Below, piece by piece: positions 20,397 through 40,736 of a stretch of DNA of 64,000 nt (positions are counted from its first letter, which is position 1; each line of letters begins with the position of its first letter). The stretch lies in assembly GCA_977020255.1 (NCBI GenBank), contig CDROCS010005398.1:1-64000 (forward strand), written 5' to 3'. The translations under genes and the position numbers were made by a program. The DNA comes from Obrimoposthia wandeli. Its lineage: Eukaryota. The notes under the pieces are model-generated. The model was not told the origin of the DNA and did not search any database. It saw only the letters and a program-made list of their open reading frames with translations.

Positions 20397-21797
20397 TCAC
20401 ACTAGGGCATTGATGAATACAATTACGATAGCCAGCGGTGTGAGGTAACGCATAGTGAATTGCCATACCTTAAATAACAAGCCGCTACCCAGCCCCAATT
20501 CTTCTTGTGCTACTTTTGCGTTAATTACCCAAGCCGCAAAGATTGCGATTAATAAGCCACCTAAAGGCATTAACAGGTTAGCGGTCAAGAAGTCGATTAA
20601 CTCAAAGAAATTCTTACCGAAAATTTTGTGATCTTCCCATATATTGAAGGAAAAGACGACACCTACGCCCATTACCCACAAGACCAAACTAAAACATACA
20701 CAGGCTTTTAGACGAGAAAATTTATATTTTTCTGTCAACCAAGAAACCGAAGGCTCAATTAAAGATATCGAAGAGGTCAGCGCCGCAATCGACACCATGA
20801 TAAAGAACAATGTACCAAAAACAACACCAAGAGGCATCTGACCAAATGCAATTGGTAGCGTGATGAACATCAAACCTGGACCAGCACCGGGCTCTAAGCC
20901 ATAAGCGAATACAATCGGGAACATAGCCATACCAGCTAACAAGGCAACGCCAGTATCAAGTAACGCAATAACCATCGAAGTTTTTACAATCGAGGTATTT
21001 TTAGGCAGGTAAGAGCCATATGCCATGATCGCACCAGCGGCCAAACTCAGGGTAAAGAAAGCATGACCTAACGCAACCAAGACACTTTCGGTAGTCAGCT
21101 TGCTAAAATCTGGAGAAAATAAGAACTCAAGCCCTTCCATAAAATGGCCAGTACTCATCGCGTAGCCAACTACGATCAGGAGCAGTGCGAGCAGAGCTGG
21201 CATTAACAGATTAATCGCTTTTTCCAAACCAGCATTAAGGCCTCGTCCGACAATCAGCATGGTTAGTAGAATGACGACTGTACTCCACGAAAGTAGACCA
21301 ATTGGATCAGCCAGCATACCACCAAACATTGCACCAGCCTGATCGGCGGTGATATCAACAAAGGCACCGCTGCCAGATGTGAACACATAGGATAGCGCCC
21401 AGCCAGCAATAACGGTATAGAAGCTCAGGACCAAAAATCCGGTGATAACGCCCATCCAGCCAACACCTCTCCAAAGTTTACTCGCCTTAGCTTCGATGGC
21501 TAAATGTTCCATTGCATCAGCAGGGTTCTTTTGAGCACGACGACCGATCATTATTTCTGCCATCATAACCGGAATACCGATTAACAAGATGCAGCCCAAG
21601 TATACTAATACGAAAGCGCCACCACCATTTTCACCAGTGATGTAGGGGAACTTCCAGATATTACCCAGGCCGACGGCAGAGCCAGCAGCAGCGAGGATAA
21701 AAGCCATGCGGCTTGACCACTGAAGACGTTTTTTACCTGTTGTTGCAGCCGAACTGCCATCTGCTGATTCAGTGATGGTACCGGTTAGATCAGACAT
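20397..21797 (-). CDS. Sodium-dependent transporter, neurotransmitter:sodium symporter (NSS/SNF) family
   Basis: WSSRMAFILAAAGSAVGLGNIWKFPY, GGGAFVLVY, GHAFFTLS, GPGLMFITLP. Confidence 0.95.
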   Translation of the reverse strand: MSDLTGTITESADGSSAATTGKKRLQWSSRMAFILAAAGSAVGLGNIWKFPYITGENGGGAFVLVYLGCILLIGIPVMMAEIMIGRRAQKNPADAMEHLAIEAKASKLWRGVGWMGVITGFLVLSFYTVIAGWALSYVFTSGSGAFVDITADQAGAMFGGMLADPIGLLSWSTVVILLTMLIVGRGLNAGLEKAINLLMPALLALLLIVVGYAMSTGHFMEGLEFLFSPDFSKLTTESVLVALGHAFFTLSLAAGAIMAYGSYLPKNTSIVKTSMVIALLDTGVALLAGMAMFPIVFAYGLEPGAGPGLMFITLPIAFGQMPLGVVFGTLFFIMVSIAALTSSISLIEPSVSWLTEKYKFSRLKACVCFSLVLWVMGVGVVFSFNIWEDHKIFGKNFFELIDFLTANLLMPLGGLLIAIFAAWVINAKVAQEELGLGSGLLFKVWQFTMRYLTPLAIVIVFINALV

Positions 21798-21872
21798 AGA
21801 TTCTTCCTTGTTTCTTATTGTTTAGTATTGTTTTATTTAGAAAACGCAGGCGCTTTAAACTCGCCATATAAT

Positions 21873-23060
21873 TTATAAAACTTTGGCAATAGACTTCGCC
21901 AAGTAATCAACATTATGGGTAGAAATACCCGCGATACTTATGCGACTAGAGTCCACCATGTATATAGAGAATTCATCTTGCAACAATTGCACCTGCTGAG
22001 CTGTAATCCCTAAAAAAGAAAACATACCGGTTTGACGCGTAATAAAACTGAAATCGCGAGTAACACCGTTACTAATTAATTTATCCACTAAAAGTTGGCG
22101 ATTTTCGTTAATACGGTCACGCATTATTTTTAGCTCTTGATGCCATTGTGATGTCAATGCTTCAGAGCTTAAAATAGTTTCAACAATGGCAGCACCATGA
22201 GCAGGAGGCATTGAATACACACCTCGGATAACAGATAACAATACCGTCAACGCATTATCGACAATGAGAGGCGACTTCCCGACGAGGGAGCAACCTCCAA
22301 TACGCTCACGATATAAACCAAAGTTTTTTGAACATGAGCTACAAACGATCATTTCGTCTACGCTACTAGCCAATAGACGAAGTCCGTAAGCATCCTCATC
22401 CAGACCGGTTCCAAACCCTTGATAAGCCATGTCTACTAATGGCATAAAACCAACATCTCGGGCGACATCTGTTATTTTTTGCCACTGCTCATTCGTTAAA
22501 TCCATGCCACTTGGGTTGTGACAACAAGCATGCAGTAATACGACATCGTCTTTTGAAACTTCTTTAAGGGTTGCCAACATGCCATCAAAATCTAAGCAAT
22601 GATCTTCATAGTCATAGTAAGGATAAGTTTTTATGTTCAAACCCGCGGCCTCGAACAAAGCCATGTGGTTTGCCCAAGTAGGATTACTCACCCATATATT
22701 CGCTCCAGGTCTGCAAGAGTTGATAAATTCAGCGGCCACGCGTAATGCCCCCGTTCCCCCAGGGGTTGAAATGGTACGAACACGATCTTCAATTAAAACC
22801 TGATGAGCACCAAAGATTAACTTACTCATTTCATCATTAAATTGTGCCGAACCAGTCGGACCAATATATACCTTGGTATCTTCTGTATCTAAGCGATGCT
22901 TCTCTGCTTTTTTCACACAATTTAGGATCTCAGTGTGTCCTAATGCGTTCTTGTATACTCCAACGCCTAAATCGATTTTATGAGGGTTTTCATCTTGTTT
23001 ATACTTAACCAAGAGTCCTAAAATAGGATCTGCTGGCATAGCATCTAAGTGACTAAACAT
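21873..23060 (-). CDS. Aromatic amino acid/aspartate aminotransferase (TyrB/PhhC/AspC class I)
   Basis: DPILGL, KIDLGVGVYK, TPGGTGALR, HACCHNPSG, DMAYQGF, SCSKNFGLYRERIG. Confidence 0.93.
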   Translation of the reverse strand: MFSHLDAMPADPILGLLVKYKQDENPHKIDLGVGVYKNALGHTEILNCVKKAEKHRLDTEDTKVYIGPTGSAQFNDEMSKLIFGAHQVLIEDRVRTISTPGGTGALRVAAEFINSCRPGANIWVSNPTWANHMALFEAAGLNIKTYPYYDYEDHCLDFDGMLATLKEVSKDDVVLLHACCHNPSGMDLTNEQWQKITDVARDVGFMPLVDMAYQGFGTGLDEDAYGLRLLASSVDEMIVCSSCSKNFGLYRERIGGCSLVGKSPLIVDNALTVLLSVIRGVYSMPPAHGAAIVETILSSEALTSQWHQELKIMRDRINENRQLLVDKLISNGVTRDFSFITRQTGMFSFLGITAQQVQLLQDEFSIYMVDSSRISIAGISTHNVDYLAKSIAKVL

Positions 23061-23196: not shown

Positions 23197-24486
23197 CTAT
23201 CCCCAATGTTCAATAACATCGACAAACTTAGCCAAAAACATATTCGTTTGATGGGCATCAAGTGCGCGATGGTCAATACTTAATGACACATAACACTTAG
23301 GTTTAATCACCATCGTATCTACACCCGATATTTCTTCTACCGTCACTCGTTTTTCTAATTTCCCGATGCCGAGAATAGCCACTTCAGGCTGATTGATAAT
23401 AATAGGGGTCGCAAACAAACTACCGCTGACACCGTGATTCGAAATCGTAAAAGTACCGTTTTTCATATCACTCGGAATGAGCTTACCGTTGCGTGCTTTT
23501 TCTGTTTGAATATTAAGACATTGAGCAATAGAAAATAAATTCATCGTTTGTACCTGCTGCACTACAGGTACCACCACGCCTTTATCACCAAGTGCGGTGC
23601 CGACACCAATATTGATATCACTAAATAGCTCTAGGGCATCTTGATGGAAACGGGCGTTTACTTGTGGTACTTCTTGCACAGCTTTAACAACCGCAGCTAA
23701 GAAATAGGCGGTAAAGGTCAAATTAACACCGAGCTCAGCAAACTCTTTTTTATGCCATTTTCTATGTTCTATAATGTTGCTCATATCCATTTCAAAAACA
23801 CTGGTAACATGAGGTGAGGTTTTCAACAAACTGTCAACCATATGCGAGGCAATGGCTTTACGTATTTTAGTGTGCGGTACCATGGTGCCCGCTAACGCTC
23901 GTGCAACAGGAAGCGAACTTGAAAGTGGAGCTCTTGAAAGTGAATCTTTTGAATGTGGAGCAATATCAGCAGTGGCCGGACTTATCTGATCGTTCGCCCT
24001 CGTTGAAAATTCGGCTAAATAAGCGTTAACATCATCTCGTGTTACTCGACCGCGTCGGCCTGTACCACAAATGCTATCAATGTTTACATCATGAGCACTT
24101 AATAAACGACGTACAGCCGGCCCCACTAAATGATGGGCAGAGCCTGCTTGTGGGCTACTTGCATTTTGCGATAAAGTCGAAGATTGACTATCTGTATTAG
24201 CGTATTCTTTTAAGCCTTTTTCTGGCATTGCCGTCGCATTTACATTTGATGTATCAAGCAAGCCTAACACTACATCAACTTCAATTTCGTCACCTTCATT
24301 AGCAATTATTTTGCTTAGGCTACCTGCTCGTTCGGCACAAATTTCCATAGAAACTTTGTCGGTTTCCAACTCAATAATTGGCTCACCTTCAAGTACTTGC
24401 TGGCCAATTTTCACTAACCACTTTGATAACGTGGCAGAGGTTCCTTCAAGTTGTTCAGCTGGTAAAATAATATCCATTGTATTCAT
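23197..24486 (-). CDS. 2-oxoacid dehydrogenase E2 dihydrolipoamide acyltransferase
   Basis: Lipoyl domain ETDKV, E3-binding PAVRRL...GTGRRGRVT, catalytic DHRALD. Confidence 0.93.
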   Translation of the reverse strand: MNTMDIILPAEQLEGTSATLSKWLVKIGQQVLEGEPIIELETDKVSMEICAERAGSLSKIIANEGDEIEVDVVLGLLDTSNVNATAMPEKGLKEYANTDSQSSTLSQNASSPQAGSAHHLVGPAVRRLLSAHDVNIDSICGTGRRGRVTRDDVNAYLAEFSTRANDQISPATADIAPHSKDSLSRAPLSSSLPVARALAGTMVPHTKIRKAIASHMVDSLLKTSPHVTSVFEMDMSNIIEHRKWHKKEFAELGVNLTFTAYFLAAVVKAVQEVPQVNARFHQDALELFSDINIGVGTALGDKGVVVPVVQQVQTMNLFSIAQCLNIQTEKARNGKLIPSDMKNGTFTISNHGVSGSLFATPIIINQPEVAILGIGKLEKRVTVEEISGVDTMVIKPKCYVSLSIDHRALDAHQTNMFLAKFVDVIEHWG

Positions 24487-24497
24487 ATTACTTCCCC

Positions 24498-26651
24498 TTA
24501 AATTTCGACGCAGTCGATGATGGTAGACTTTATACGTGCGACAGTCGGTACGGCGGCATTTAATAAATGAATATTATGGGGGCTTGGCGTATCAGGCATG
24601 GTTAATCGCTCTATTGGCGCATCTAAATCAAAAAATGCTTCCTTGGCTAATACCGCCGCGATTTCAGCACCAAAACCAGCAGTCAGGTTATCTTCATGAA
24701 CAATTATACAACGGCCTGTTTTTTTAACGGACGCTAATATAGTCTCTTTATCCCATGGTTGAATCGTACGTAAATCAATAACTTCAATTGCTAAACCTTG
24801 TTCATTTACAAGTTCGGAGGCTGCTATTTCACAACGTTCAACCATCGCCCCCCAAGTAACAACCGTGACTTTGTCACCTGCCATTAAGATATTGGCTTTT
24901 CCAAATGGAATAACATAATCATCACCAGGGTAAGGTCGGCGTGCCCAACGGTTATCCAGTAACGTTCTATGTTCAAAGAAAATAGTTGGGTTGTTATCGC
25001 GTAAAGCATAACGAAGTAATCCGGCAGCATCTTCAGCATTTGACGGCATAACAACTTGCCAACCCGTTTTGTGTGCCCATTCAACTTCATCACACATTGA
25101 ATGCCAAGGATCACCACGACCAGCAAAACCACCAGGAATACGTATAACCATAGGCGCAGCAAACTGATTATTAGTGCGCCAGCGCATGATGCCCGTATCG
25201 ACAATTTGTTCGGCGGCAGGTTCTGCATATTTTCTGAATTGAATTTCAGGTACCGGCATTAAACCAGAAAGCGCCATACCCACTGCACGGCCAATGATGC
25301 CTTCTTCAGAAAGGCTGGTATCGAATACACGATGGTCACCATATTTTTCATTCAAGCCAATTGTTGCGCCATGAACACCACCTTTAGGACCAACATCTTC
25401 ACCAAATACGAGTACCTTCGGGTTAGTGTTAAGTTCATGGTCTAAAACTTTACGAATAGCTGTTTGCATATTTAGGCGTTGACCTTCAGGTTTTGCTATT
25501 TCGCTCACTTCAGGAAATTGATAATTATCGCCGTGTAAACCGCCACGAAGTTGTACTTCTGGTACGCCGTTTTGATCTTTTTCGGCATAAACATAACGGG
25601 TTAAATTGTCAACATTTGGTTCTGGACGTTGCTTGCCTCTTTTAGCACTTTGACGAATATCGTCATAAGCTTTTTCTTCCAAAGCTTGCCATTCACTTTC
25701 ACTGATAATTTGTTCTTTAGCCAAATGTGCTTTTAGTTTTGGTAAAGGATCGTTAGCTTGTTCTTGTGCAACCATCGCTTCAGGCTTATAAGTTTGCGTA
25801 TCCTGGAAAGTATGCCCACATAAACGAGGTACTTTTAATCGTAATAAACAGGTGCCCTTGCCGCTACGAACATAATCAACCGCTTCTTGCACTAATTTTG
25901 GGGTTAGTACAGGATCGGTTCCGTCACCATCAATTATTTTTAAATTTTTATAGGCTGACAAGTTAGCAACCTGATCACCACCCGGTGTTTGTACTGTTTG
26001 TGGCACTGAAATACCGTAGCCATTATCTTCAATATAAAACAAATGAGGTAAGTTATTGGTGGTTGAGATATTTAACGATGCCCAAAAACCACTTGTTGAC
26101 ATAGAAGAGTCGCCCCCCATAGATAAACCTAGCGCACCTCGATAAGATTCATCTTTAAGTTCATCGCGATGATAAATAATAGATTGAGCCCAGCCTGCAA
26201 TAGGAGAATATTGCGCGCCAACACCGCCACACATAGGAAATAACATCGCGCCAGTTCGTTCAACATTAGGGTAGTTACAGACCACACCAATATCACGACC
26301 GTCACTATAACCACCTGATTTTGCCATCGGAGAAGCAACCGCTTCATCAATATCTAAACCAAGGGATAATACGAATGGGCGAGAACGATAATAACCGGTA
26401 GCGCCATCATGAGGATGTGTTAATTGAATCCCCAGTAATATCTGAGCAAAATCATGACCGCGGGCTGAAAACTGATTAAATACCAACTTCTCAGGTACTA
26501 ATTCTTTTTCTTCAATATCATCCATAGCACGGGATAGTAGTAGTAAATAACTTATTTTATGCCAGTCAAGAATTGGTCGTTCACTGATACGAGGAATACT
26601 AATAGTGTCTCTATCGGTGAACTGACTGCTGTACATTTCAGCTATATTCAT
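24498..26651 (-). CDS. Fused E1 alpha/beta 2-oxoacid dehydrogenase (BCKDH-like, TPP-dependent)
   Basis: Alpha part RLCGH..QD...Y and a TPP-motif variant GDSS...EDNGYGIS; beta part GEDVGPKGGV, FDTSLSEEGIIG, EIQF, GDPWHS, EVIDLRTIQPWD. Confidence 0.9.
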   Translation of the reverse strand: MNIAEMYSSQFTDRDTISIPRISERPILDWHKISYLLLLSRAMDDIEEKELVPEKLVFNQFSARGHDFAQILLGIQLTHPHDGATGYYRSRPFVLSLGLDIDEAVASPMAKSGGYSDGRDIGVVCNYPNVERTGAMLFPMCGGVGAQYSPIAGWAQSIIYHRDELKDESYRGALGLSMGGDSSMSTSGFWASLNISTTNNLPHLFYIEDNGYGISVPQTVQTPGGDQVANLSAYKNLKIIDGDGTDPVLTPKLVQEAVDYVRSGKGTCLLRLKVPRLCGHTFQDTQTYKPEAMVAQEQANDPLPKLKAHLAKEQIISESEWQALEEKAYDDIRQSAKRGKQRPEPNVDNLTRYVYAEKDQNGVPEVQLRGGLHGDNYQFPEVSEIAKPEGQRLNMQTAIRKVLDHELNTNPKVLVFGEDVGPKGGVHGATIGLNEKYGDHRVFDTSLSEEGIIGRAVGMALSGLMPVPEIQFRKYAEPAAEQIVDTGIMRWRTNNQFAAPMVIRIPGGFAGRGDPWHSMCDEVEWAHKTGWQVVMPSNAEDAAGLLRYALRDNNPTIFFEHRTLLDNRWARRPYPGDDYVIPFGKANILMAGDKVTVVTWGAMVERCEIAASELVNEQGLAIEVIDLRTIQPWDKETILASVKKTGRCIIVHEDNLTAGFGAEIAAVLAKEAFFDLDAPIERLTMPDTPSPHNIHLLNAAVPTVARIKSTIIDCVEI

Positions 26652-27023: not shown

Positions 27024-27575
27024 ATGTCAGATAAACCAATAGTGACAATAAAAAGTAAAAACCTTAATAAGCAAGCTAAATCACCTGAAGGAAAAGTTAC
27101 TTCAAACTTAGATTTACAAACATTTTTACCTTATAGAATGTATTGTTTAGCTGCGCAAATGTCTCACGCTGGCAATGACTTACCTGAATTATTAAATGAT
27201 ACTGGTTTCACCATTGGAGAAAGAGAGTGGCGTGTTGTTTCAATTTTGGGAGCGTACGGCGGATTAACCAATGGATATGTTGCTAACGCACTGAAAACCG
27301 ATGCTGCCACCGTTTCTCGTGCAGTGAAGGTATTAAAAAGCGCAAACTTAATAGATACATTAAATTCAAAAAAAGATAGGCGCAAAGTGTTAATTTATTT
27401 AACAGAATCGGGTGCTAGACTTTATGATAAAGTAACCCCTAAGCGTATTGAAACCGGACAAATGATCGACAGCGGCTTCACACATGAAGAACTATCTACT
27501 TTGCATCACCTATTAAATAAACTTGATCGTCATTTGCAACATATGGAAAATGAATACGAAGATGAATGGGAGTAA
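27024..27575 (+). CDS. MarR-family transcriptional regulator
   Basis: FLPYR, EWRVV, ATVSRAVK.L, DRRK..IYLTESG winged helix. Confidence 0.92.
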   Translation: MSDKPIVTIKSKNLNKQAKSPEGKVTSNLDLQTFLPYRMYCLAAQMSHAGNDLPELLNDTGFTIGEREWRVVSILGAYGGLTNGYVANALKTDAATVSRAVKVLKSANLIDTLNSKKDRRKVLIYLTESGARLYDKVTPKRIETGQMIDSGFTHEELSTLHHLLNKLDRHLQHMENEYEDEWE

Positions 27576-27857
27576 TGAGAAGACATTCTATTTACTGACA
27601 ATATAATTCATCTCTCTTTTAATCTCCCTTATAACAATCTCGCTAAATATAATCTCCGATTGAATTATACTGATAATAAGATATATCATATAACCAGGTA
27701 TAGAGTCACTTAATGGCATAAGTTTTTGAAAGCCATGGTTTACCCGAGTTTGATGGTATGGATAAAGCAGTATTAAGTATCAATGTATTAAAACGCAACC
27801 GGTAATAAGACAAAAGATGACACCAACCTACAGAGAGTTGGTGGTTCACCTATCTAT

Positions 27858-33280: not shown

Positions 33281-33284
33281 GGCA

Positions 33285-34061
33285 TTACCACTTCGCGCCA
33301 GGCATAGAACGATGAACAAACTGCATCTCGGTTAAGATGTGTCCCAAGCTTTCAGTATGATAGCCTTCACGACCACCTCGTACAGCCCATTCGACTTCGG
33401 GTACTTTGAGCGTTGCCTGTTCAAGTATTGCGCTGACATCCTTGAGCCATGCCTGTTTAAAGCTGGCGCAATCCACCGCGATACCCACAGCGACTAAGCG
33501 TTGCTCTAGATCATCTTGTTCGAACATCTCATGGGTATAACCCCACAAATCATCGACTGCATTTTGCATGCGTTCGTTGCTCTCACTGGTGCCATCGCCA
33601 AGACGCAGGGTCCACTCTTTACTGCGGCGATTATGATAAACCGTTTCTTTAGCAGCCTTATGAGCGATCGCAGCTAAGGTTTCATCCGTCGATAACTTTA
33701 ACGCCTCAAGATAATGGGCGTTATAAACATCCACGAGCAGTTGGCGCAGGATGGTATAAGCAAAATCACCACGAGGTAATTCATTGATTAAATGATTTTG
33801 ATACTCACGTTCATCGCGCATATAGGCAAAATCATCTTCAGATTTACTCGTTTCGCCGCCTTGAGCATTGTACACTTCGGCGGCATAGGTGTAATACATC
33901 CGCGCACGACCGATATAATCTAAGGCTACATTGCCCAGCGCGATATCTTCTTCCAAAAATGGGCCATTGCTTACCCACTCAGAGAGACGGTGACCCAATA
34001 TTAATGAGTCATCACCAAGGCGCGTGGCATATTGCATAATGTCTTGTAATTGTGGATTCAT
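33285..34061 (-). CDS. paaC: Phenylacetyl-CoA epoxidase subunit PaaC
   Basis: LGDDSLILGHRLSEW...PFLEEDIA, KETVYH, HTESLGHILTEMQ. Confidence 0.96.
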   Translation of the reverse strand: MNPQLQDIMQYATRLGDDSLILGHRLSEWVSNGPFLEEDIALGNVALDYIGRARMYYTYAAEVYNAQGGETSKSEDDFAYMRDEREYQNHLINELPRGDFAYTILRQLLVDVYNAHYLEALKLSTDETLAAIAHKAAKETVYHNRRSKEWTLRLGDGTSESNERMQNAVDDLWGYTHEMFEQDDLEQRLVAVGIAVDCASFKQAWLKDVSAILEQATLKVPEVEWAVRGGREGYHTESLGHILTEMQFVHRSMPGAKW

Positions 34062-34073
34062 AACAACTTCCTG

Positions 34074-34364
34074 CTACATGTTGGTGACTTCTTTAGGGAG
34101 CGGATAATGAGTCGCATGGCGATAAGGTTTATCGTCCGCGGGATCAAAGAAACTTTCGCTGTCATCTTCTTGTGATGCACAGATATCTTTTGATTTGACC
34201 ACCCAAATACTGACCCCTTCACTGCGACGAGTATAAACATCTCTGGCATACTCCAGCGCTTGTTCCTGATCTTCGGCATGCAGGCTGCCAGTATGTTTAT
34301 GATCCAAACCCCGCTTAGAACGCACGAACACTTCAAATAATTCTAATTTTTCTACACTCATCAT
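34074..34364 (-). CDS. paaB: Phenylacetyl-CoA epoxidase subunit PaaB
   Basis: EVFVRSKRGLDHKHTGSLHA, ARDVYTRRSEGVSIWVV, DKPYRH. Confidence 0.96.
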   Translation of the reverse strand: MMSVEKLELFEVFVRSKRGLDHKHTGSLHAEDQEQALEYARDVYTRRSEGVSIWVVKSKDICASQEDDSESFFDPADDKPYRHATHYPLPKEVTNM

Positions 34365-34388
34365 AATTCTCCGTTGAGTTACTGCGCT

Positions 34389-35360
34389 CTAAGCGACATG
34401 TTGGGCTTTGCGTTGCGCTTTCTTTTCGTTATAAGCGGCCATAGCCTCACGAACCCAAGCCCCTTCTTCATGCGCTTTTACATGATGCGCAATCCGTTGG
34501 CGATTACAGTGGCCATTGCCATTGATCACCGCATAAAATTCTTCCCAGTTAAGCTCACCACTATCGAAATGGCCGCGCGCTTCATTCCATTTCAAATCTT
34601 TATCTGGGTGTTCTAACCCTAAATATTCGATTTGACTGACAGTCTGGTCAATAAATTTTTGACGTAGATAGTCATTGGTCTCACGCTTAATCTTCCACTT
34701 CATCGATTTAGCCGAATGGGCAGATTCAGCATCATGTGGACCGAACATCATTAAAGAAGGCCAGTAAAAACGATTAAGCGAGTCTTGCGCTAGGCGTTTT
34801 TGCGCTGGTGTGCCATGAGCTAATTCAATCATGACTTGGTAGCCTTGACGCTGATGGAAACTTTCTTCTTTACAGATCCGCACCATGCCGCGTGAGTATG
34901 GACCGTAAGATGTACGCTGCAATGACACCTGATTGACGATGGCAGCACCATCAACTAACCAGCCAATTGCGCCCATATCACCCCAGGTCTGTGCCGGATA
35001 ATTAAAGATAGAAGCGTACTTTGCGCTGCCATCTTGAAGCGCCGCGATTAAATCGCTACGAGATACCCCTAGGGTCTCAGTCGCACTGTAGAGATACAAA
35101 CCATGCCCGGCTTCGTCCTGAACCTTAGCCAACAACACCGCTTTACGACGCAGTGAAGGCGCTCTGGTGATCCAGTTTCCTTCTGGCTGCGTTCCAATTA
35201 TTTCAGAATGCGCATGTTGCGACATTTGACGAATTAAATTTTTGCGATAGGCATCAGGCATCCAATCTTTAGGTTCAATTTTTTGCTCATCAGCGACCTT
35301 TTGTTCAAAAGCTGCTTCGAGTTCTGCTTCAGTCTTATTATATTTTGTCATTTTTTCCAC
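34389..35360 (-). CDS. paaA: Phenylacetyl-CoA epoxidase catalytic subunit PaaA
   Basis: [42 protein letters not shown]. Confidence 0.97.
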
Positions 35361-35383: not shown

Positions 35384-35419
35384 GATACGAATATATTCAA
35401 ATAAAAATAATAACGTATC
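35384..35419. promoter_or_regulatory. Candidate PaaX operator upstream of paaA
   Basis: GATACG-N24-CGTATC inverted repeat. It resembles the GATACA-N26-TGTATC type operator recalled for Pseudomonas PaaX, but the spacing differs. Confidence 0.45.
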
Positions 35420-35488: not shown

Positions 35489-36691
35489 TTAGACCCGTTC
35501 AATGATCAGCGCTATACCTTGTCCAACACCAATACACATAGTGCAAAGGGCATATCGGCCGCCTGTGCGATGGAGCTGATACATTGCAGTGGTGACTAGT
35601 CTCGCGCCACTAGCACCTAAAGGATGACCAAGGGCAATGGCTCCGCCATTCGGATTAACATGCGCCGCATCATCACTTAACCCCAGCTCCCTAAGCACCG
35701 CTAATCCTTGTGCAGCAAAGGCTTCGTTAAGCTCGATAACATCCATTTGTTCTAAACTCAGTCCTGTGCGTGCCAACACCTTACGTGTGGCAGATACAGG
35801 GCCATAACCCATGATCTTCGGTTCCAGTCCAGAGGATGCCATACCAACAACGCGTGCTTTTGGGGTGAGCCCATGGCGCTTAACACCAGCACTCGATGCC
35901 AGCAATAACGCGCAAGCACCATCATTAACACCTGACGCATTACCCGCAGTAACACTACCTCCTTCACGAAACGGCGTGGCTAATTTTGCCAACGCTTCGA
36001 TACTGCTCAGGCGTAAATGCTCATCGGTATCAAAAACAAGGTCATCTTTCTTACGTTGTGGGATGATCACTGGCACGATTTCCTGAGCAAATATCCCTTC
36101 GCGCTGTGCATTTGCAGCCTTGGTCTGGCTGTTAAAAGCAAACAAATCTTGCGCCGCGCGATTGATATTAAACTGCTCGGCAACATTTTCTGCGGTCTCG
36201 GGCATCGAGTCGACGCCGTATTGTCGCTTCATCTGCTTATTAACAAAGCGCCAACCGATCGTGGTGTCATACATTTCGGCACTACGACTAAACGCAGTGT
36301 CCGCTTTAGCCATCACAAAAGGAGCACGGGACATGGATTCGACACCACCGGCAATCATAAGATCAGCCTCGCCACTGCGGATCGCACGAGCCGCGCTACC
36401 CACCGCATCAATACCAGAACCGCACAAACGGTTAAGCGTTAGCCCTGGCGCCTCAATCGGTAAACCGCCGAGTAATCCGCTCATGCGAGCAACATTGCGA
36501 TTGTCTTCCCCTGCCTGATTAGCACAGCCGTAATACACATCATCGAGCATAGTCCAATCAACATCTGGATTTCGCTTGATCAATGCGGCAATGGGCACCG
36601 CGCCCAAATCATCGGCTCTGACACTGGCTAGCGTTCCGCCGTAGCGGCCAAAAGGAGTTCTTATTGCGTCACAAATAAATGCATCTATCAT
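35489..36691 (-). CDS. paaJ: 3-oxoadipyl-CoA/3-oxo-5,6-dehydrosuberyl-CoA thiolase (PaaJ/PcaF)
   Basis: [50 protein letters not shown]. Confidence 0.93.
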
Positions 36692-36705
36692 TTCTTATTC
36701 CTTAA

Positions 36706-37158
36706 TTATGCTGGCAGTACGCTACGTTTAATTCTCACAGAGTTACCTTTAAACAAAGCAACCACTTGATGGTCTTGATTACTGACAGTGACGTGATAAA
36801 TCCCACTGCGCTTACCTTGATGTAATTGGCTTGCCTTAGCAGTCAATACATCGCCTTTAAATGCGGGCATCAGATAATCGATTGAGCAACCAGCGGCAAC
36901 GGCGGCAAAATTTTCTGAATTACAAGCGAAGGCGAAAGCAGAGTCCGCGAACGAAAAAATATTGCCACCATGACAGGTTCCGTGACCATTGAGCATGACC
37001 GCAGTAATGGACATGATGGCTGTTGCCTCACCGGCATCGACTTCTATAAAGTTGATACCCAACGCCTTTGAGGCGGCATCGTTTTCCATCATGTGTGCGG
37101 CACATGCTCGCGCTAGTTGCTTTATCTGCTGTGCATTTTGATTTGTGCTCATTGGCAT
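36706..37158 (-). CDS. paaI: Hydroxyphenylacetyl-CoA thioesterase PaaI
   Basis: MLNGHGTCHGG..F..ADSAFAFACNS hotdog motif. Confidence 0.95.
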   Translation of the reverse strand: MPMSTNQNAQQIKQLARACAAHMMENDAASKALGINFIEVDAGEATAIMSITAVMLNGHGTCHGGNIFSFADSAFAFACNSENFAAVAAGCSIDYLMPAFKGDVLTAKASQLHQGKRSGIYHVTVSNQDHQVVALFKGNSVRIKRSVLPA

Positions 37159-37164
37159 CTGATC

Positions 37165-37956
37165 CTATTCACCGCTGAACACTGGCTGACGTTTTTCCAT
37201 AAAGGCGCTCACGCCTTCGCGGTAATCATTAGAGCGACCAAGATCCTGCATCGCCTCTTTTTCTAGTTCTAACTGTTGATGCAACGGATTCGAAAACGAA
37301 TCATTGAGTAATTTTTTAATCATCCCTAGGCCTTTGGTAGGCTGGGCAGCTAAATGCTGGGCGATGTTTAAAGTTTCACTCATCAGCTGATCATCATCAA
37401 CACACTGCCAAATCATTCCCCAACTTTGGGCTTGCTCGGCGCTTAACTTACCACCAAGCAACGCCAAGCCTTTGGCACGGGGTAATCCGAGTGCGCGCGG
37501 CAAGTTAAAAGTGCCGCCTGAATCGGGAACCAAACCAATTTTACAAAACGCCTGGACAAATTTAGCGCTGCGCGCTGCCAATACAATGTCACAAGCTAGT
37601 GCTATGCTCGCACCAGCGCCTGCTGCAACGCCGTTTACTGCGCAAAGTACTGGTTTTTCCATCGTCATGATATTGCGAATAAGCGGGTTATAATATTTTT
37701 CAATCGACTCACCCAAATTCGGCGCTTCGTCACTCGCTTTTACCGAGCGGTCACCTAAATCCTGTCCTGCACAAAAACCTCGTCCTGCGCCGGTTAACAC
37801 TAAACAACGCACATCAAAATTAGTGCGGGCGTCTTTAATCGCCACTTTTACCTCGTCATGCATTTGTACGGTAAAACTGTTTAATGTCTGCGGACGATTT
37901 AGGGTTAGCACTGCAACCCCGTTATTTATTTCGTATGTAATTGTTTCAAAATTCAT
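37165..37956 (-). CDS. paaG: Epoxyphenylacetyl-CoA isomerase PaaG
   Basis: LNRPQTLNSF, GRGFCAGQDL, GLVPDSGGT, DYREGV.AF.EKR.P. Start at ATG 37956. Confidence 0.93.
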   Translation of the reverse strand: MNFETITYEINNGVAVLTLNRPQTLNSFTVQMHDEVKVAIKDARTNFDVRCLVLTGAGRGFCAGQDLGDRSVKASDEAPNLGESIEKYYNPLIRNIMTMEKPVLCAVNGVAAGAGASIALACDIVLAARSAKFVQAFCKIGLVPDSGGTFNLPRALGLPRAKGLALLGGKLSAEQAQSWGMIWQCVDDDQLMSETLNIAQHLAAQPTKGLGMIKKLLNDSFSNPLHQQLELEKEAMQDLGRSNDYREGVSAFMEKRQPVFSGE

Positions 37957-38052
37957 CAAAATTCCCTTTCTCTTTACTGATCCAGTGCTCTGGACATCAT
38001 TGTTATTTTCAGCCACTATAAGTTCAAAATTAACCCAAATGGAGTTGCTGCA

Positions 38053-38643
38053 ATGCCAATTTATGCCATGGAAGATCTAATTCCGGTTATCGACCCTTCT
38101 GCTTATATCCACCCCACCGCCGTGATTATCGGTGACGTTATTATTGGAAAAGACTGTTATATTGGCCCCAATGCCGTATTACGTGGCGACTTTGGCCGCA
38201 TCGTGCTCGAACAGGGCTGCAATGTGCAAGATACTTGCGTTATTCATAGTTTTCCGGACAAAGACTGCGTCATCAAACAAGATGGTCACATCGGTCACGG
38301 CGCGATCCTGCATGGCTGTGTCATCGGCCGCAACGCCCTAGTAGGCATGAATGCGGTGGTAATGGACGATGCTATTATTGGTGATGAGTCCTTGGTTGCC
38401 GCCACCGCCTTTGTTAAATCAGGTTTCCAATGTCCTCCAAGAAGCCTGCTTGCCGGTAGCCCAGCGCAAATCAAACGTGAGTTAAGCGAAAAAGAAGTGG
38501 CCTGGAAAACCAGTGGCACCGCCGAATATCATCACCTAACCACCCGTTGCCATCAGAGCATGCATGAGGTCGAACCGCTACGCGAAGTTCAGGCTCAGCG
38601 CCCTCGCTTTAGTACCAGCAATCATCGGCCTAAAGAGAGCTAA
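38053..38643 (+). CDS. paaY: PaaY (gamma-carbonic-anhydrase-like hexapeptide protein)
   Basis: Hexapeptide repeats, [29 protein letters not shown]. Confidence 0.93.
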
Positions 38644-38687
38644 TCGTTAACCTCGAGCATCATGATTGATACTCGATTTCAACCACA

Positions 38688-40736
38688 TTAAGCTTCTTGT
38701 CGCTCAACCAAAGTTAAGATGTCGTAAAGCGCGACAATAACACCATGCTGATTGACCACCTCAACATCCCATACCACCACGCCAGTCGCTTTAAGCTCAT
38801 CAGGGCGCTGGTCTTTCTTGATTTTTTTCTTCGCGGTAATTTTGACTTGAATGGTATCGCCAATTGCTACCGGTTCAACAAAACGCAAATTTTCGAGACC
38901 ATAGTTGGCTAAAACAGGACCTGGTGCTGGATCAACAAACATCCCTGCCGCCGCCGAAATAATGAAATAACCATGGGCAACACGCTTACCAAACAACGAG
39001 TCTTTAGCCGCTAATTCGTCAAAATGGGCGTAAAAATGGTCGCCAGATAAGCAACCGAAATTAACGATATCCGCTTCCGTTACCGTGCGGCGATGCGTAG
39101 TTAAGCTTTCGCCTACCAGCAGCTCTTCGAAGTATTTTCTAAATGGGTGTTTTTCGTGATTGCAGGTCTTTGCGCCAGCCATGTATTCCTTCGTGACGGC
39201 CATTAAGGTGCTTGGTGAACCTTGAATAGCACTGCGCTGCATATAATGCTTAATTGCGCGAGAGCCACCAAGTTCTTCACCGCCACCAGCGCGCCCAGGG
39301 CCACCATGTACCAATGTTGGCAATGGCGAACCATGTCCGGTTGATTCTTTGGCACAATCACGGTTAAGGATCAGCATACGGCCATGATACGCGGCGGCAT
39401 TTAATATAAATTGCGTCGCTTCTTCATTATCATAGGTGACGATTGAACCGACTAAACTCCCCTTACCTAAACGAGCGATCTCGACTGCTTGTTCGATCCC
39501 TTCATATGGCATGATGGTACTCACAGGGCCAAAAGCCTCGATACTATGGGGTGCATCGGTGGTCAATGGATTAGCGCAATACAATAAGGTCGGAGGATAA
39601 AATGCGTTAGGTTCAACATTGTCGCCTACAACTTCAAACGAGGCGTGATTGCCGCCATAGATCACTTCGCAGTAATCACTCAATTTGGCAACTGTGTCTT
39701 TAATATCTGCACATTGCGCACGGCCAACTAATGGGCCCATACGTACACCTTCGACTGCGGGATCGCCCATCACCACTTTATCTAATCGCGCTTTTAGTGC
39801 ATCGCTTACAGCGCTAACCTTAGTCGCAGGCACGATAATGCGGCGGATCGCGGTACATTTTTGTCCTGCCTTGATTGTCATTTCTTTAACGACTTCTTTA
39901 ATAAACAAGTCAAATTCAGGATCATCAACAGCAACTGTTTCGCCCAGTACCGCACAGTTTAATGAATCAGCTTCCATATTAAATGGAATGCTGTTGTCCA
40001 CAATATTTGGATGACAACGTAATTTTTTGCCTGTAGCAGCCGACCCTGTAAAGGTAACAACATCTTGCTCATCTAAATGTTCGAGTAAATCCCCGACATA
40101 ACCACAGATCAACTGAATTGAACCCTCTGGTAATAAGCCAGAATTAATAATTTCTTCCACCACTGCCTGAGTTAGGTAAGCAGAAACAGTAGCAGGCTTA
40201 ACAATTACCGGTACGCCGGCGATTAAGCTCGGTGCAATTTTTTCTAACATACCCCAGCACGGGAAGTTAAACGCATTGATATGTACCGATACACCAGGCT
40301 TAGAGGTTAAAATGTGGCGCGCTGCAAAGGTACCATTAGCTGATAACAGTTCTGGTGCACCTTCAACAATAAACTTTTCATTGGCAAATTCGCGACGCGC
40401 AATACCAGAGTAGCTAAACATAGTGGATAAACCACCTTCGATGTCAATCCAGCTGTCAACTTTGGTGGCGCCAGTTTTGGCCGAAATAGCATACAAGTGC
40501 TCTTTTTTCGCTAATAGGTATTTACCAAGATTTTTCAGTGCAGTGGCTCGTTCATGAATGGTCATCTCGCGCAGCGCTTTACCACCAACATCACGTCCGT
40601 ACTCAACCATTTTCTTAAAATTTAAACCATCACTACTCACATTGCAGACCAACTCGCCACTTATTGCATTATGAACCGCCACTCCTTCACTTTGTCCTTC
40701 CACCCAGCTTCCACAACAGTAACTTGCTGATTTCAT
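38688..40736 (-). CDS. paaZ: Bifunctional oxepin-CoA hydrolase / aldehyde dehydrogenase PaaZ
   Basis: [57 protein letters not shown]-terminal MaoC domain. Confidence 0.97.

What the first reader, a model, noticed from the sequence alone, without database searches (positions are those of the whole stretch)
20397..40736. Island A: probable phenylalanine catabolic route into the paa pathway without PaaK
Seen: NSS transporter, aromatic aminotransferase, fused E1 and E2, MarR, a FadB-like enzyme and paaABCDE/G/I/J/X/Y/Z. There is no paaK, paaF, paaH or E3 gene in the window. Known: PaaABCE acts on phenylacetyl-CoA; 2-oxoacid dehydrogenase complexes yield acyl-CoA directly; NSS bacterial members carry amino acids. 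Inference: Phe is imported, transaminated to phenylpyruvate and oxidatively decarboxylated to phenylacetyl-CoA by a dedicated complex borrowing host E3. That makes the ligase unnecessary.
Basis: partly seen in the sequence, partly recalled or inferred. Interest (0 to 1): 0.7.

Follow-up and report, generated by a model that had tools for sequence, protein, structure and literature searches.

The report
Probable phenylpyruvate dehydrogenase feeding paa pathway
A marine bacterium keeps an uncharacterised two-gene 2-oxoacid dehydrogenase beside its phenylacetate-degradation genes, and comparison with about 90 related genomes suggests that it turns phenylalanine-derived phenylpyruvate straight into phenylacetyl-CoA, a route not yet shown by experiment.

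Summary
Window 20397-40736 encodes an MhsT-like NSS transporter, an AspC/TyrB-family aminotransferase, an E2, a single-chain E1 alpha-beta, MarR, a FadB-like hydratase/dehydrogenase, EthD and paaX-E-D-C-B-A-J-I-G-Y-Z. There is no paaK or E3 in the 64 kb.

The E1/E2 pair belongs to a tight clade (70-96% identity) of marine Gammaproteobacteria. E2 follows E1 in 71 of 71 loci with room. At least one paa gene lies within 10 kb in 31 of 80 loci, in at least five different junction types. Other recurring neighbours are the same aminotransferase family, NSS transporters and Lrp, MarR or TyrR/PhhR-like regulators. No branched-chain catabolic genes turned up among the neighbours I annotated.

The best reading is a lipoamide-type phenylpyruvate dehydrogenase complex that makes phenylacetyl-CoA and uses the cell's shared E3.

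"Without PaaK" needs qualifying:
- Several full clusters lack paaK, but Marinomonas and one near relative carry it in the same cluster.
- The window holds relics of a deleted ADP-forming acyl-CoA synthetase gene that is intact in its closest relative.
- paaF and paaH are probably covered by the FadB-like fusion.

Absence of paaK from the whole genome and the enzyme's substrate remain untested. I rate it a new variant of a known kind.

The parts
20337..20376 (-). Strong terminator-like hairpin (18-bp stem followed by a T run) closing the E1-E2-aminotransferase-NSS unit
20397..21797 (-). Sodium:solute symporter of the NSS family; its closest solved relative is MhsT. Proposed role: Phe or hydrophobic amino-acid uptake.
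   Evidence: Pfam SNF and NCBIfam NF037979 above cut-off. Best PDB match is 4us3 at E=3e-107, against about 1e-44 for LeuT.
21873..23060 (-). Class Ia (AspC/TyrB-family) aminotransferase. Proposed role: Phe to phenylpyruvate.
   Evidence: NF006719 576.6 bits, cut-off 377. 50% identical to E. coli AspC; closer to AspC than to TyrB. The same family sits next to E1-E2 in 8 related loci.
23197..24486 (-). E2 dihydrolipoyl acyltransferase with one lipoyl domain, a peripheral-subunit (E3/E1) binding domain and a catalytic domain
   Evidence: Pfam domains. The lipoyl-lysine motif ETDKVSME and the catalytic DHRALDA can be read in the translation. Below every NCBIfam equivalog cut-off.
24498..26651 (-). 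Single-chain E1 alpha-beta (717 aa), ThDP-dependent. Proposed phenylpyruvate decarboxylating/dehydrogenase component.
   Evidence: Pfam E1_dh + Transket_pyr + Transketolase_C. The GDS...EDNGY and CGHT motifs align with solved E1 alpha chains. Distinct clade.
27024..27575 (+). MarR-family regulator (weakly HpaR-like), divergent from E1. Probable regulator of the upper module.
   Evidence: An orthologue (59-85% identical) accompanies E1-E2 in 13 loci, including some without paa genes nearby.
27681..27802 (+). Relics of a deleted ADP/NDP-forming acyl-CoA synthetase gene: a 39-bp internal piece plus the last ~28 codons. The gene is intact (720 aa) in the closest relative, L092.
   Evidence: tblastn 27722-27802, 85% identity to aa 694-720. 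DNA alignment and blastn breakpoints. Pfam and NCBIfam results for the intact gene.
27973..30090 (-). Enoyl-CoA hydratase + 3-hydroxyacyl-CoA dehydrogenase fusion. Proposed to supply the PaaF and PaaH steps.
   Evidence: Pfam ECH_1 + 3HCDH_N + 3HCDH. FadJ/FadB models score far below cut-off. Found in paa clusters that lack paaF/paaH. 49% identical to the Aliikangiella counterpart.
30158..30475 (-). EthD-family protein inside the cluster; role unknown
   Evidence: TIGR02118 58.5 bits, cut-off 30.5. Conserved at the same place in L002 and L092.
30527..31465 (-). PaaX-type repressor
   Evidence: TIGR02277 258.6 bits, just under the cut-off of 264.55
31525..35360 (-). paaE-D-C-B-A, the phenylacetyl-CoA 1,2-epoxidase. 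The listed TTG start of paaD overlaps paaC and is probably too far upstream.
   Evidence: PaaD is called at 180 aa in L092.
35384..35419 (.). Inverted repeat GATACG-N24-CGTATC in the paaJ-paaA spacer; a PaaX-operator-like site
   Evidence: Only exact match in the window. GATAC-N22-28-GTATC recurs upstream of paaA or paaF/G in 10 related loci.
35489..38016 (-). paaJ (3-oxoadipyl-CoA thiolase), paaI (thioesterase), paaG (isomerase)
   Evidence: all above equivalog cut-offs
38053..38643 (+). paaY (hexapeptide-repeat thioesterase)
   Evidence: TIGR02287 310.5 bits, cut-off 319.6. The opposite-strand position between paaZ and paaG is conserved in the relatives.
38688..40736 (-). paaZ (oxepin-CoA hydrolase / aldehyde dehydrogenase)
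   Evidence: TIGR02278 1028 bits
19392..19771 (-). tRNA Pro-Leu-His array, the left border repeat of the island
41679..41978 (-). Second, IS-disrupted copy of the tRNA array (tRNA-Pro), the right border repeat of the island

Best explanation
The E1 alpha-beta and E2 genes (24498-26651 and 23197-24486) probably encode a lipoamide-dependent phenylpyruvate (arylpyruvate) dehydrogenase complex.

Proposed route:
1. Phenylalanine enters through the MhsT-like Na+ symporter.
2. The adjacent class Ia aminotransferase converts it to phenylpyruvate.
3. E1 (ThDP) decarboxylates phenylpyruvate and reductively phenylacetylates the lipoyl arm of E2.
4. E2 transfers the acyl group to CoA.
5. The cell's housekeeping dihydrolipoyl dehydrogenase, bound through the E2 peripheral-subunit-binding domain, re-oxidises the lipoamide and yields NADH.
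6. The product, phenylacetyl-CoA, is the substrate of PaaABCDE and the expected inducer that releases PaaX. It is degraded by PaaG, PaaZ, PaaJ and the FadB-like hydratase/dehydrogenase (standing in for PaaF and PaaH) to acetyl-CoA and succinyl-CoA.

Regulation appears to be split. The upper module (E1-E2-aminotransferase-NSS) is under the divergent MarR. In other lineages it is under Lrp/AsnC or a TyrR/PhhR-like activator. The lower paa genes are under PaaX.

Phe catabolism by this route needs no phenylacetate-CoA ligase. A ligase (PaaK or an ADP-forming synthetase) is an optional extra that is present in some relatives and lost here.

Shown here: gene content, domain architecture, catalytic motifs, conserved synteny. 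Inferred: substrate, direction of flux, regulator-target pairs, and the source of E3.
For: 1. Distinct clade.
- The top 120 relatives are 75-96% identical single-chain E1s from Colwellia/Alteromonadaceae, Kangiellaceae/Aliikangiella, Marinomonas, Porticoccaceae, Cellvibrionaceae and others.
- In a search of 1.84 billion representatives the next proteins are only 54%, 46% and 44% identical, then below 40%.
- The 54% and 46% outgroups have no adjacent E2 or paa genes.
- The clade has 100% SH-aLRT support on a long stem.

2. It is not PDH or BCKDH.
- All NCBIfam PDH E1 and E2 models score below cut-off.
- The beta half is about equally distant from solved PDH, BCKDH and Thermus E1 beta chains (E from 1e-70 to 1e-67).
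- The alpha half is very divergent (best E=1e-18).

3. Synteny.
- E2 follows E1 in 71 of 71 loci with room.
- At least one paa gene is present in 31 of 80 loci and at least two in 25 of 80, although many flanks are cut short.
- paa adjacency occurs in the earliest-branching lineages and throughout the tree.
- It comes in several different junction types: E2 followed by paaZ; E2 beside paaX/paaY-paaFGHIJK; paaA-MarR beside E1; FadB-like-MarR beside E1; and E2-paaX...paaK beside paaZ.

4. Other recurring neighbours fit aromatic amino-acid use.
- The same aminotransferase family in 8 loci; NF006719 passes its cut-off.
- NSS transporters.
- A TyrR/PhhR-family regulator divergent from E1 in L056, L060 and L061.
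- Lrp/AsnC in 28 loci.
- None of the roughly 30 other neighbour families annotated is a branched-chain catabolic gene.

5. Full superclusters without paaK occur in four lineages: the window, Aliikangiella sp. IMCC44359, an Enterobacterales MAG chromosome and the TyrR-type lineage.

6. No dedicated E3 lies in any locus. In five Colwellia loci E1-E2-MarR sits directly upstream of pdhR-aceE-aceF-lpd.

7. The catalytic equipment is intact.

8. A PaaX-operator-like repeat is found upstream of paaA but not of E1, which fits a two-tier regulation.

9. Precedents for the chemistry.
- PglB/PglC, 'pyruvate dehydrogenase-like', are suggested to convert phenylpyruvate to phenylacetyl-CoA in Streptomyces pristinaespiralis (PMC7089894, PMC10685826).
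- Direct conversion of Phe via phenylpyruvate to phenylacetyl-CoA, skipping phenylacetate, is reported for Phaeobacter inhibens (review PMC7497051).
Against: - There is no biochemical, genetic or expression evidence for any member of this clade.
- About half of the loci with full flanks (28 of 54) have no paa gene within 10 kb. I could not check whether those genomes, for example Kangiella, have paa genes at all.
- Lrp/AsnC regulators and an MhsT-like transporter would suit a broader hydrophobic 2-oxoacid dehydrogenase equally well.
- The aminotransferase is AspC-like at four of the six classical AspC/TyrB specificity positions (the position assignment is from my own knowledge).
- PaaK co-occurs with E1-E2 in Marinomonas and in L093, so the complex does not simply replace the ligase.
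- Public annotations call these proteins 2-oxoisovalerate or pyruvate dehydrogenase. These are automatic names, but nothing contradicts them experimentally.
Confidence: 0.65

Rival explanations
1. The complex is a broad-specificity dehydrogenase for hydrophobic or branched-chain 2-oxoacids, a BCKDH analogue of marine Gammaproteobacteria. Phenylpyruvate would be at most one substrate among several, and closeness to paa would reflect only one of several downstream fates.
For: - Lrp/AsnC regulators lie upstream in 28 loci, as BkdR does for the Pseudomonas bkd operon (the BkdR parallel is from my own knowledge).
- MhsT-type transporters carry both branched-chain and aromatic amino acids (substrate range from my own knowledge).
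- The aminotransferase is AspC-like.
- 28 of 54 fully flanked loci have no paa gene nearby.
- Public automatic names say 2-oxoisovalerate dehydrogenase.
Against: - No isovaleryl-CoA, methylmalonate-semialdehyde or other branched-chain catabolic gene is a recurring neighbour in any of 80 loci; the non-paa neighbours are unrelated housekeeping genes.
- The alpha half is far from solved BCKDH E1 alpha chains.
- E2 scores better against PDH/OGDH E2 chains than against BCKDH E2 chains.
- paa adjacency has been re-formed in several distinct arrangements.
Confidence: 0.2
2. The enzyme has the same activity (phenylpyruvate to phenylacetyl-CoA), but the primary role of the upper module is an ATP-yielding oxidation of Phe to excreted phenylacetate through the ADP-forming acyl-CoA synthetase. 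This would be analogous to archaeal IOR + ACS II, with paa degradation only an aerobic add-on. In the window this branch has been lost.
For: - An intact 720-aa NDP-forming acyl-CoA synthetase follows MarR, which is itself divergent from E1, in L092. It is also near MarR-E1-E2 in L012, where no paa gene lies within 10 kb.
- Relics of this gene remain in the window.
- The E1-E2-MarR unit exists without adjacent paa genes in several Colwellia loci.
Against: - The synthetase was found in only 2 of about 90 loci.
- Its substrate and direction are unknown, and it scores far below all curated models.
- In the window it has been deleted while the paa genes are intact.
- Most lineages link E1-E2 directly to paaZ.
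Confidence: 0.1
3. The E1/E2 pair acts on an unrelated 2-oxoacid such as pyruvate, 2-oxobutyrate or an acetoin-type substrate. Its position next to paa would then be a historical accident carried along by descent.
For: NCBIfam best hits are PDH E1 beta and E2 models, and some public names say pyruvate dehydrogenase. The loci are related by descent, so the counts overstate independence.
Against: - All those hits are below the curated cut-offs.
- A housekeeping aceE-aceF-lpd exists alongside in Colwellia.
- The linkage persists across several orders at 70-75% E1 identity and in at least five different gene orders.
- An aminotransferase and TyrR/PhhR-like or Lrp regulators recur alongside.
Confidence: 0.05

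Closest known systems
PglB/PglC 'phenylpyruvate dehydrogenase' of the Streptomyces pristinaespiralis phenylglycine operon (PMC7089894, PMC10685826)
   Same: E1-type ThDP enzymes of the pyruvate-dehydrogenase alpha/beta kind, proposed to convert phenylpyruvate to phenylacetyl-CoA without a free phenylacetate intermediate.
   Different: - PglB and PglC are separate alpha and beta subunits with no dedicated E2 in the operon.
- Their role is biosynthetic (L-phenylglycine for pristinamycin I) in an actinomycete, and the activity is 'suggested' rather than assayed in the papers I read.
- Here alpha and beta are one chain, a dedicated E2 always follows, and the context is catabolic (paa).
- I could not test sequence relatedness because no PglB/PglC sequence was available.
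Indolepyruvate/phenylpyruvate:ferredoxin oxidoreductase routes (IOR, PPFOR), e.g. Phaeobacter inhibens Phe to phenylacetyl-CoA (PMC7497051) and gut anaerobes (papers listed)
   Same: The same pathway logic: transamination, then CoA-dependent oxidative decarboxylation of phenylpyruvate straight to phenylacetyl-CoA, bypassing PaaK.
   Different: A wholly different enzyme family: iron-sulfur, ferredoxin-dependent 2-oxoacid:ferredoxin oxidoreductases, often oxygen-sensitive. The present system is a lipoamide/NAD+-type complex suited to aerobes.
Branched-chain 2-oxoacid dehydrogenase complex (e.g. the Pseudomonas putida bkd operon with BkdR; PDB 1qs0, 2bp7, 1dtw)
   Same: E1 of the alpha/beta type plus an E2 with lipoyl, PSBD and catalytic domains. 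Lrp-family regulators upstream in many loci. Amino-acid catabolic role after transamination.
   Different: - E1 is one chain and its alpha half is very divergent.
- There is no dedicated E3 (LpdV-like) in any locus.
- Neighbours are paa genes, not branched-chain pathway genes.
- It does not reach any curated family cut-off.
Classical paa clusters of E. coli K-12 and Pseudomonas (paaABCDEFGHIJK-XY, paaZ)
   Same: paaA-E, G, I, J, X, Y and Z are all present and mostly pass equivalog cut-offs. A PaaX-operator-like inverted repeat lies before paaA.
   Different: No paaK. paaF and paaH are replaced by one ECH + 3HCDH fusion. There is an extra EthD gene. An upper module (E1-E2-aminotransferase-NSS-MarR) is attached.
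Archaeal ADP-forming aryl-acyl-CoA synthetase (ACS II) working with IOR (from my own knowledge)
   Same: The deleted gene whose relics lie at 27681-27802 belongs to the NDP-forming acyl-CoA synthetase superfamily. It sits next to an arylpyruvate-oxidising module.
   Different: It is a bacterial single-chain form of unknown substrate, far below all curated models, and present in only two of the relatives examined.

Membership tests
2-oxoacid dehydrogenase complex, alpha/beta-type E1 | E1_dh (PP) + Transket_pyr (Pyr) + Transketolase_C domains | tested here: met
   Pfam, all three above gathering score, in one 717-aa chain
2-oxoacid dehydrogenase complex, alpha/beta-type E1 | ThDP/Mg2+-binding motif and catalytic histidines | tested here: met
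   GDS-x27-EDNGY aligns with GDG...ENNFY of 1um9_A, and CGHT aligns with GPHS/HGHS. The beta-half SEEG and WHS motifs are invariant in the clade. Motif roles are from my own knowledge.
2-oxoacid dehydrogenase complex | Cognate E2 with lipoyl domain, peripheral-subunit-binding domain and acyltransferase core | tested here: met
   Pfam Biotin_lipoyl + E3_binding + 2-oxoacid_dh. Lipoyl Lys and DHR motif present. Adjacent in 71 of 71 loci.
2-oxoacid dehydrogenase complex | E3 dihydrolipoyl dehydrogenase | tested here: not met
   No Lpd homologue in the window and none dedicated in any locus. Sharing one E3 between complexes is normal in E. coli (my own knowledge), so this does not exclude membership.
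Pyruvate dehydrogenase E1 alpha/beta (NCBIfam NF006667, TIGR03181/2) | Score at or above the curated cut-off | tested here: not met
   251.1 vs 321, 117.5 vs 411 and 107 vs 394
Branched-chain 2-oxoacid dehydrogenase | Orthology to BCKDH E1/E2 and linkage to branched-chain catabolic genes | tested here: not met
   No BCKDH model among the NCBIfam hits. Solved BCKDH chains are no closer than PDH chains. No branched-chain pathway genes among recurring neighbours. Substrate range not testable here.
Phenylacetate (paa) catabolic pathway | PaaABCDE epoxidase, PaaG, PaaZ, PaaJ | tested here: met
   Equivalog cut-offs passed for PaaA, B, C, D, G, Z and J (and for PaaI, which is not a defining member). 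PaaE 409.7 vs 420.8 is marginally below.
Phenylacetate (paa) catabolic pathway | PaaK phenylacetate-CoA ligase | tested here: not met
   No tblastn hit in the 64 kb. Also absent from the full clusters in L083/L085, L088 and L089. Present in L039, L045, L048 and L093. The rest of the genome is not testable.
Phenylacetate (paa) catabolic pathway | PaaF hydratase and PaaH dehydrogenase | tested here: inconclusive
   No separate genes. The ECH + 3HCDH fusion matches the PaaH and PaaF models only at domain level (221 vs 669 and 122.6 vs 371). It occurs in paa clusters that lack paaF/paaH, and Marinomonas and Porticoccus clusters that have paaF/paaH lack it.
PglB/PglC-type phenylpyruvate dehydrogenase | Sequence relatedness to PglB/PglC; phenylpyruvate to phenylacetyl-CoA activity | not tested
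NSS (SLC6-like) amino-acid symporters | SNF fold; similarity to characterised amino-acid carriers | tested here: met
   Pfam SNF 176 bits, NF037979 120 vs 50. MhsT (4us3) at E=3e-107. Substrate not testable.
Aromatic (TyrB-type) aminotransferase | TyrB-like residues at the AspC/TyrB specificity positions 39, 41, 47, 69, 109 and 297 | tested here: not met
   Alignment A2 gives V, K, T, V, T, M. This is AspC-like at 39, 41, 47 and 109, and hydrophobic at 69 and 297 (position list from my own knowledge). The family-level model NF006719 is met.

The most novel reading that the evidence does not exclude
A so far unrecognised class of lipoamide-dependent 2-oxoacid dehydrogenase complex, specific for phenylpyruvate (arylpyruvates). 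It is built from a single-chain E1 alpha-beta plus its own E2 and is widespread in marine Gammaproteobacteria. It would give aerobes a ligase-free, NADH-yielding entry of phenylalanine into the phenylacetyl-CoA epoxidase pathway. In some lineages it would be coupled to an ADP-forming synthetase that could conserve the thioester as ATP.
Probability: 0.5. Interest if true: 0.7.

Novelty: new variant of a known kind. Interest (0 to 1): 0.6.

Why it matters
- Textbook aerobic routes from phenylalanine to the paa pathway go through free phenylacetate and the ATP-consuming ligase PaaK. The known ligase-free routes use oxygen-sensitive ferredoxin oxidoreductases.
- A lipoamide/NAD+-type phenylpyruvate dehydrogenase would be a further substrate class for the well-studied 2-oxoacid dehydrogenase complexes.
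- It would correct the automatic '2-oxoisovalerate/pyruvate dehydrogenase' names now attached to many sequences of this clade in marine genomes and metagenomes.
- It would change how Phe and phenylacetate use is predicted for abundant marine heterotrophs such as Colwellia, Marinomonas, Kangiellaceae and Porticoccaceae.
- It offers an oxygen-tolerant enzyme for making phenylacetyl-CoA in engineered pathways.

Tried and rejected
- **PaaX operator before E1.** The GATAC-N22-28-GTATC repeat is found before paaA or paaF/G but never before E1. I dropped the idea that PaaX controls the upper module.
- **MarR operator footprint.** The palindrome CGCGACAG-TCT-GTCG in the E1-MarR spacer did not recur in Colwellia-group upstream regions by a simple pattern search. 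It leads nowhere as it stands.
- **TyrB-like specificity residues in the aminotransferase.** Not found.
- **Literature.** I found no paper describing a lipoamide-type phenylpyruvate dehydrogenase complex that feeds paa catabolism. Only the PglB/C and IOR-type precedents turned up. The held library does not cover subscription journals.
- **Rfam scan of 19000-46000.** Only tRNAs.
- **Whole-genome check for paaK, a canonical BCKDH, IOR or paa genes in carrier genomes.** Not possible, because the single genome-contig scan went on the E1 search and no tool lists all the genes of one genome.
- **Substrate-pocket modelling.** Not attempted. The tools do not return model coordinates, and I could not recall the pocket residues of solved E1s reliably.
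- **A further large protein search with PaaK.** I judged it uninformative, since it cannot show absence from one genome, and did not run it.

Full report
**1. What is in the window**

Reading in the direction of transcription (minus strand), the order is:

- paaZ (40736-38688)
- paaY on the opposite strand (38053-38643)
- paaG, paaI, paaJ (38016-35489)
- paaA-B-C-D-E (35360-31525)
- paaX (31465-30527)
- an EthD-family gene (30475-30158)
- an enoyl-CoA hydratase / 3-hydroxyacyl-CoA dehydrogenase fusion, 'FadB-like' (30090-27973)
- MarR on the plus strand (27024-27575)
- a 717-aa single-chain E1 alpha-beta (26651-24498)
- E2, 11 bp downstream (24486-23197)
- an AspC/TyrB-family aminotransferase (23060-21873)
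- an NSS transporter (21797-20397)
- a strong terminator-like hairpin (20376-20337)

E. coli PaaK and Lpd, fetched as references, give no tblastn hit in the 64 kb. PaaF and PaaH hit only paaG and the FadB-like gene. The larger ORFs elsewhere in the window have unrelated architectures.

**2. The E1/E2 pair is a family of its own**

- None of the curated NCBIfam models claims either protein. The best, PDH E1 beta, scores 251 against a cut-off of 321.
- Against solved structures, the beta half is about equally distant from Thermus 2-oxoacid dehydrogenase, PDH and BCKDH (E from 1e-70 to 1e-67).
- The alpha half, where substrate specificity mostly lies in this enzyme class (my own knowledge), is very divergent, with a best E of 1e-18.
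- The cofactor and catalytic motifs are nonetheless kept.
- The word-index search returned 120 top relatives of 75-96% identity, all with the same three-domain single chain. Where named, they come from marine Gammaproteobacteria.
- The exhaustive search of 1.84 billion cluster representatives shows a sharp edge. The next proteins are 54%, 46% and 44% identical, and the rest fall below 40%.
- The 54% and 46% outgroups have neither an adjacent E2 nor paa genes.
- In a tree the clade has full support on a long stem.

**3. Gene neighbourhoods**

I fetched eighty genome loci around orthologues, compared them with the window's proteins, and clustered their ORFs without reference to known families.

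- E2 follows E1 in 71 of 71 loci with room.
- The only recurring functional neighbours are:
  - paa genes (at least one in 31 of 80 loci, at least two in 25, although many flanks are truncated)
  - an Lrp/AsnC regulator divergent from E1 (28 loci)
  - MarR (13 loci)
  - PaaX (11 loci)
  - the same aminotransferase family (8 loci)
  - NSS transporters
  - in one lineage, a TyrR/PhhR-family activator divergent from E1
- The other neighbours I annotated are unrelated housekeeping genes. No branched-chain catabolic gene appears among them.
- On the E1 tree, paa adjacency is present in the earliest-branching lineages and scattered throughout. Of 54 rows (53 loci with adequate flanks plus the window), 26 have at least two paa genes.
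- The loci are related by descent, so these are not independent counts. However, the junctions differ:
  - E2 followed by paaZ (Aliikangiella, several Alteromonadaceae, Porticoccaceae, an Enterobacterales MAG)
  - E2 beside paaX/paaY-paaFGHIJK (Marinomonas)
  - paaA-MarR beside E1 (L002)
  - FadB-like-MarR beside E1 (the window, L092)
  - E2-paaX...paaK beside paaZ (L093)
- This variety argues for repeated selection of the linkage rather than one frozen accident.

**4. Most likely function**

A class Ia aminotransferase produces a 2-oxoacid from an amino acid. An E1/E2 complex turns a 2-oxoacid into the acyl-CoA one carbon shorter. PaaABCDE acts on phenylacetyl-CoA (established knowledge of these families). 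The single substrate that connects the three is phenylpyruvate.

This is probably a lipoamide-type phenylpyruvate (arylpyruvate) dehydrogenase complex whose product enters the paa pathway directly.

The E2 has a peripheral-subunit-binding domain. No locus has a dedicated E3. Lpd homologues occur only where the housekeeping pdhR-aceE-aceF-lpd operon happens to lie next door, in the Colwellia loci L004-L008; L005 is cut off before lpd, so Lpd itself is seen in four of the five. Borrowing the cell's E3 is thus the general state for this family, and it is ordinary for such complexes.

The transporter's closest solved relative by far is MhsT, at 3e-107. MhsT is a carrier of hydrophobic amino acids, including aromatic ones (substrate range from my own knowledge).

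**5. Regulation**

An exact inverted repeat, GATACG-N24-CGTATC, lies in the paaJ-paaA spacer (35384-35419). It is the only exact match in the window. The same kind of repeat recurs before paaA, or before paaF/G, in ten related loci. This resembles the PaaX operators I recall from Pseudomonas, but that resemblance is a lead rather than a test.

Nothing like it precedes E1. E1-E2 is instead paired with MarR, Lrp or a TyrR/PhhR-like regulator, depending on lineage. This fits an upper module that senses the amino acid or the 2-oxoacid, and a lower pathway that senses phenylacetyl-CoA. I could not define a MarR operator.

**6.

- **paaF and paaH.** They are absent as separate genes. The ECH + 3HCDH fusion occurs in paa clusters that lack them (the window, L002, L050, L085, L088, L092). 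It is missing from the Marinomonas and Porticoccus clusters that have paaF and paaH. It is 49% identical between the window and Aliikangiella. It probably supplies both steps.
- **Ligase content varies.**
  - No ligase is seen in the complete clusters of the window, of Aliikangiella sp. IMCC44359 (E1-E2-paaZ-Y-G-I-J-A-B-C-D-E-X-FadB-like-MarR), of an Enterobacterales MAG chromosome and of the TyrR-type lineage.
  - Marinomonas clusters end in a paaK 65-67% identical to the E. coli enzyme.
  - L093, whose E1 is 87% identical to the window's, has a paaK 69% identical to E. coli PaaK, lying divergent from paaZ.
- **A ligase gene was lost here recently.**
  - The closest relative is L092 (E1 96% identical; 93% DNA identity over window 20333-32000). 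It has the window's gene order plus one extra gene between FadB-like and MarR.
  - That gene encodes a 720-aa NDP-forming acyl-CoA synthetase with ATP-grasp_5, CoA_binding_2 and Succ_CoA_lig domains.
  - The window retains only a 39-bp internal fragment (27681-27719) and the last ~28 codons (27720-27802) of it.
  - Two separate remnants mean deletion in the window's lineage, not insertion in the relative.
  - So this cluster had a possible alternative phenylacetate/phenylacetyl-CoA ligase until recently. Its substrate and direction are unknown.
- **The aminotransferase.** It is 50% identical to E. coli AspC and 43-46% to TyrB-like sequences. It is AspC-like at four of the six classical specificity positions.
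- **The rest of the genome.** Whether a paaK lies elsewhere could not be tested.

**7. Rival readings**

- The main rival is a broad hydrophobic/branched-chain 2-oxoacid dehydrogenase. It is favoured by the Lrp regulators, the broad-range transporter family, the AspC-like aminotransferase and the loci without paa nearby.
- It is disfavoured by the complete lack of branched-chain pathway neighbours, the divergent alpha half, and the repeated re-linking to paa.
- A second rival keeps the same enzyme activity but sees phenylacetate plus ATP (through the ADP-forming synthetase) as the main output.
- Chance adjacency with an unrelated substrate is unlikely.

**8. Comparison with what is known**

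- The chemistry has precedents:
  - PglB/PglC of Streptomyces pristinaespiralis. This is a pyruvate-dehydrogenase-like alpha/beta pair suggested to make phenylacetyl-CoA from phenylpyruvate for phenylglycine biosynthesis (PMC7089894, PMC10685826).
  - Ferredoxin-dependent IOR/PPFOR enzymes, including the direct conversion of Phe to phenylacetyl-CoA in Phaeobacter inhibens (PMC7497051).
- The idea of bypassing PaaK is therefore not new.
- What appears to be undescribed is a catabolic, lipoamide/NAD+-type complex with single-chain E1 and its own E2, attached to paa clusters across several orders of marine Gammaproteobacteria. This is judged from ten full-text searches of the held library, which does not cover subscription journals.
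- I rate it a new variant of a known kind. It is of moderate to good interest and needs enzyme and knockout tests.

**9. Setting of the island**

The segment 19772-41105 lies between two copies of a tRNA Pro-Leu-His array. A third copy lies at 56586-57177. The middle copy is split by an IS21 element and a DDE_3 transposase gene. The island's GC content is 0.436, against 0.397 for the rest of the window. No integrase gene was seen. The L092 contig ends about 230 bp after the NSS gene, as would be expected at a repeated array.

Noticed in passing
window 27681-27802 (compare L092:6383-8545): Two short relics of a 720-aa NDP/ADP-forming acyl-CoA synthetase gene. The gene is intact in the closest relative (L092) and in Colwellia locus L012. 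The window's lineage lost it through two deletions.
   Followed up: yes
window 19392-19771, 41679-41978 + 45382-45561, 56586-57177: A tRNA Pro-Leu-His(-Arg-Pro) array occurs three times, so the paa/E1 island and a second ~10-kb segment each sit between copies. The middle copy is split by IS21 (istA 42046-43401, istB 43537-44262) and a DDE_3 transposase gene (44456-45358), and tRNA-Leu is missing there.
   Followed up: partly
window 41106-41547 and 56037-56454: A ~440-bp segment upstream of the tRNA arrays is duplicated at 81-94% identity over its parts (94% over the 300-nt core). It contains a small ORF and, in the first copy, a 15-bp unit (GTCTGTTACAACATA in the transcribed sense) repeated three times at about 41,210-41,260.
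   Followed up: no
window 45562-56036: The second segment between tRNA arrays carries a radical-SAM/SPASM protein, a GT4 glycosyltransferase, an NAD-dependent epimerase, a carbamoyltransferase, a histidine-phosphatase/WG-repeat protein and a sigma-54-type AAA+ activator. It may be a separate island.
   Followed up: no
window 30158-30475; L002:4337-4663; L092:3689-4006: An EthD-family gene (TIGR02118 above cut-off) is conserved between paaX/paaE and the FadB-like gene in the Colwellia-type clusters. Its role in phenylacetate catabolism is unknown.
   Followed up: no
L093:12159-13778: In this near relative the E2 is 539 aa with two lipoyl domains, against one in the window. The cluster there also holds a true paaK (L093:19262-20557, minus strand).
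   Followed up: partly
L004-L008 (Colwellia): E1-E2-MarR lies directly upstream of the housekeeping pdhR-aceE-aceF-lpd operon. These are the only loci in which any Lpd homologue is near the E1/E2 pair.
   Followed up: yes
L018 and L021: Contigs from MAGs labelled Phenylobacterium (Alphaproteobacteria) and Polaribacter (Bacteroidota) carry E1 genes that nest inside the Alteromonadaceae and Kangiella groups with the same neighbours. These are probably mis-binned contigs rather than gene transfer.
   Followed up: no
P0132, P0174, P0181, P0183, P0189 and others: Distant relatives (33-37% identity) of 1000-1200 aa cover the whole E1 alpha-beta and have several hundred extra residues. They may be fusions with further domains.
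   Followed up: no
L047, L048, L058, L069-L071: An aldehyde dehydrogenase lies a few genes from E1-E2. Its best specific match is phenylacetaldehyde dehydrogenase StyD, at 392 bits against a cut-off of 850.
   Followed up: partly
window 32738-33319: The mechanically listed paaD ORF (TTG start, 193 aa) overlaps paaC by 35 nt. The orthologue in L092 is called at 180 aa, so the true start is probably further downstream.
   Followed up: no
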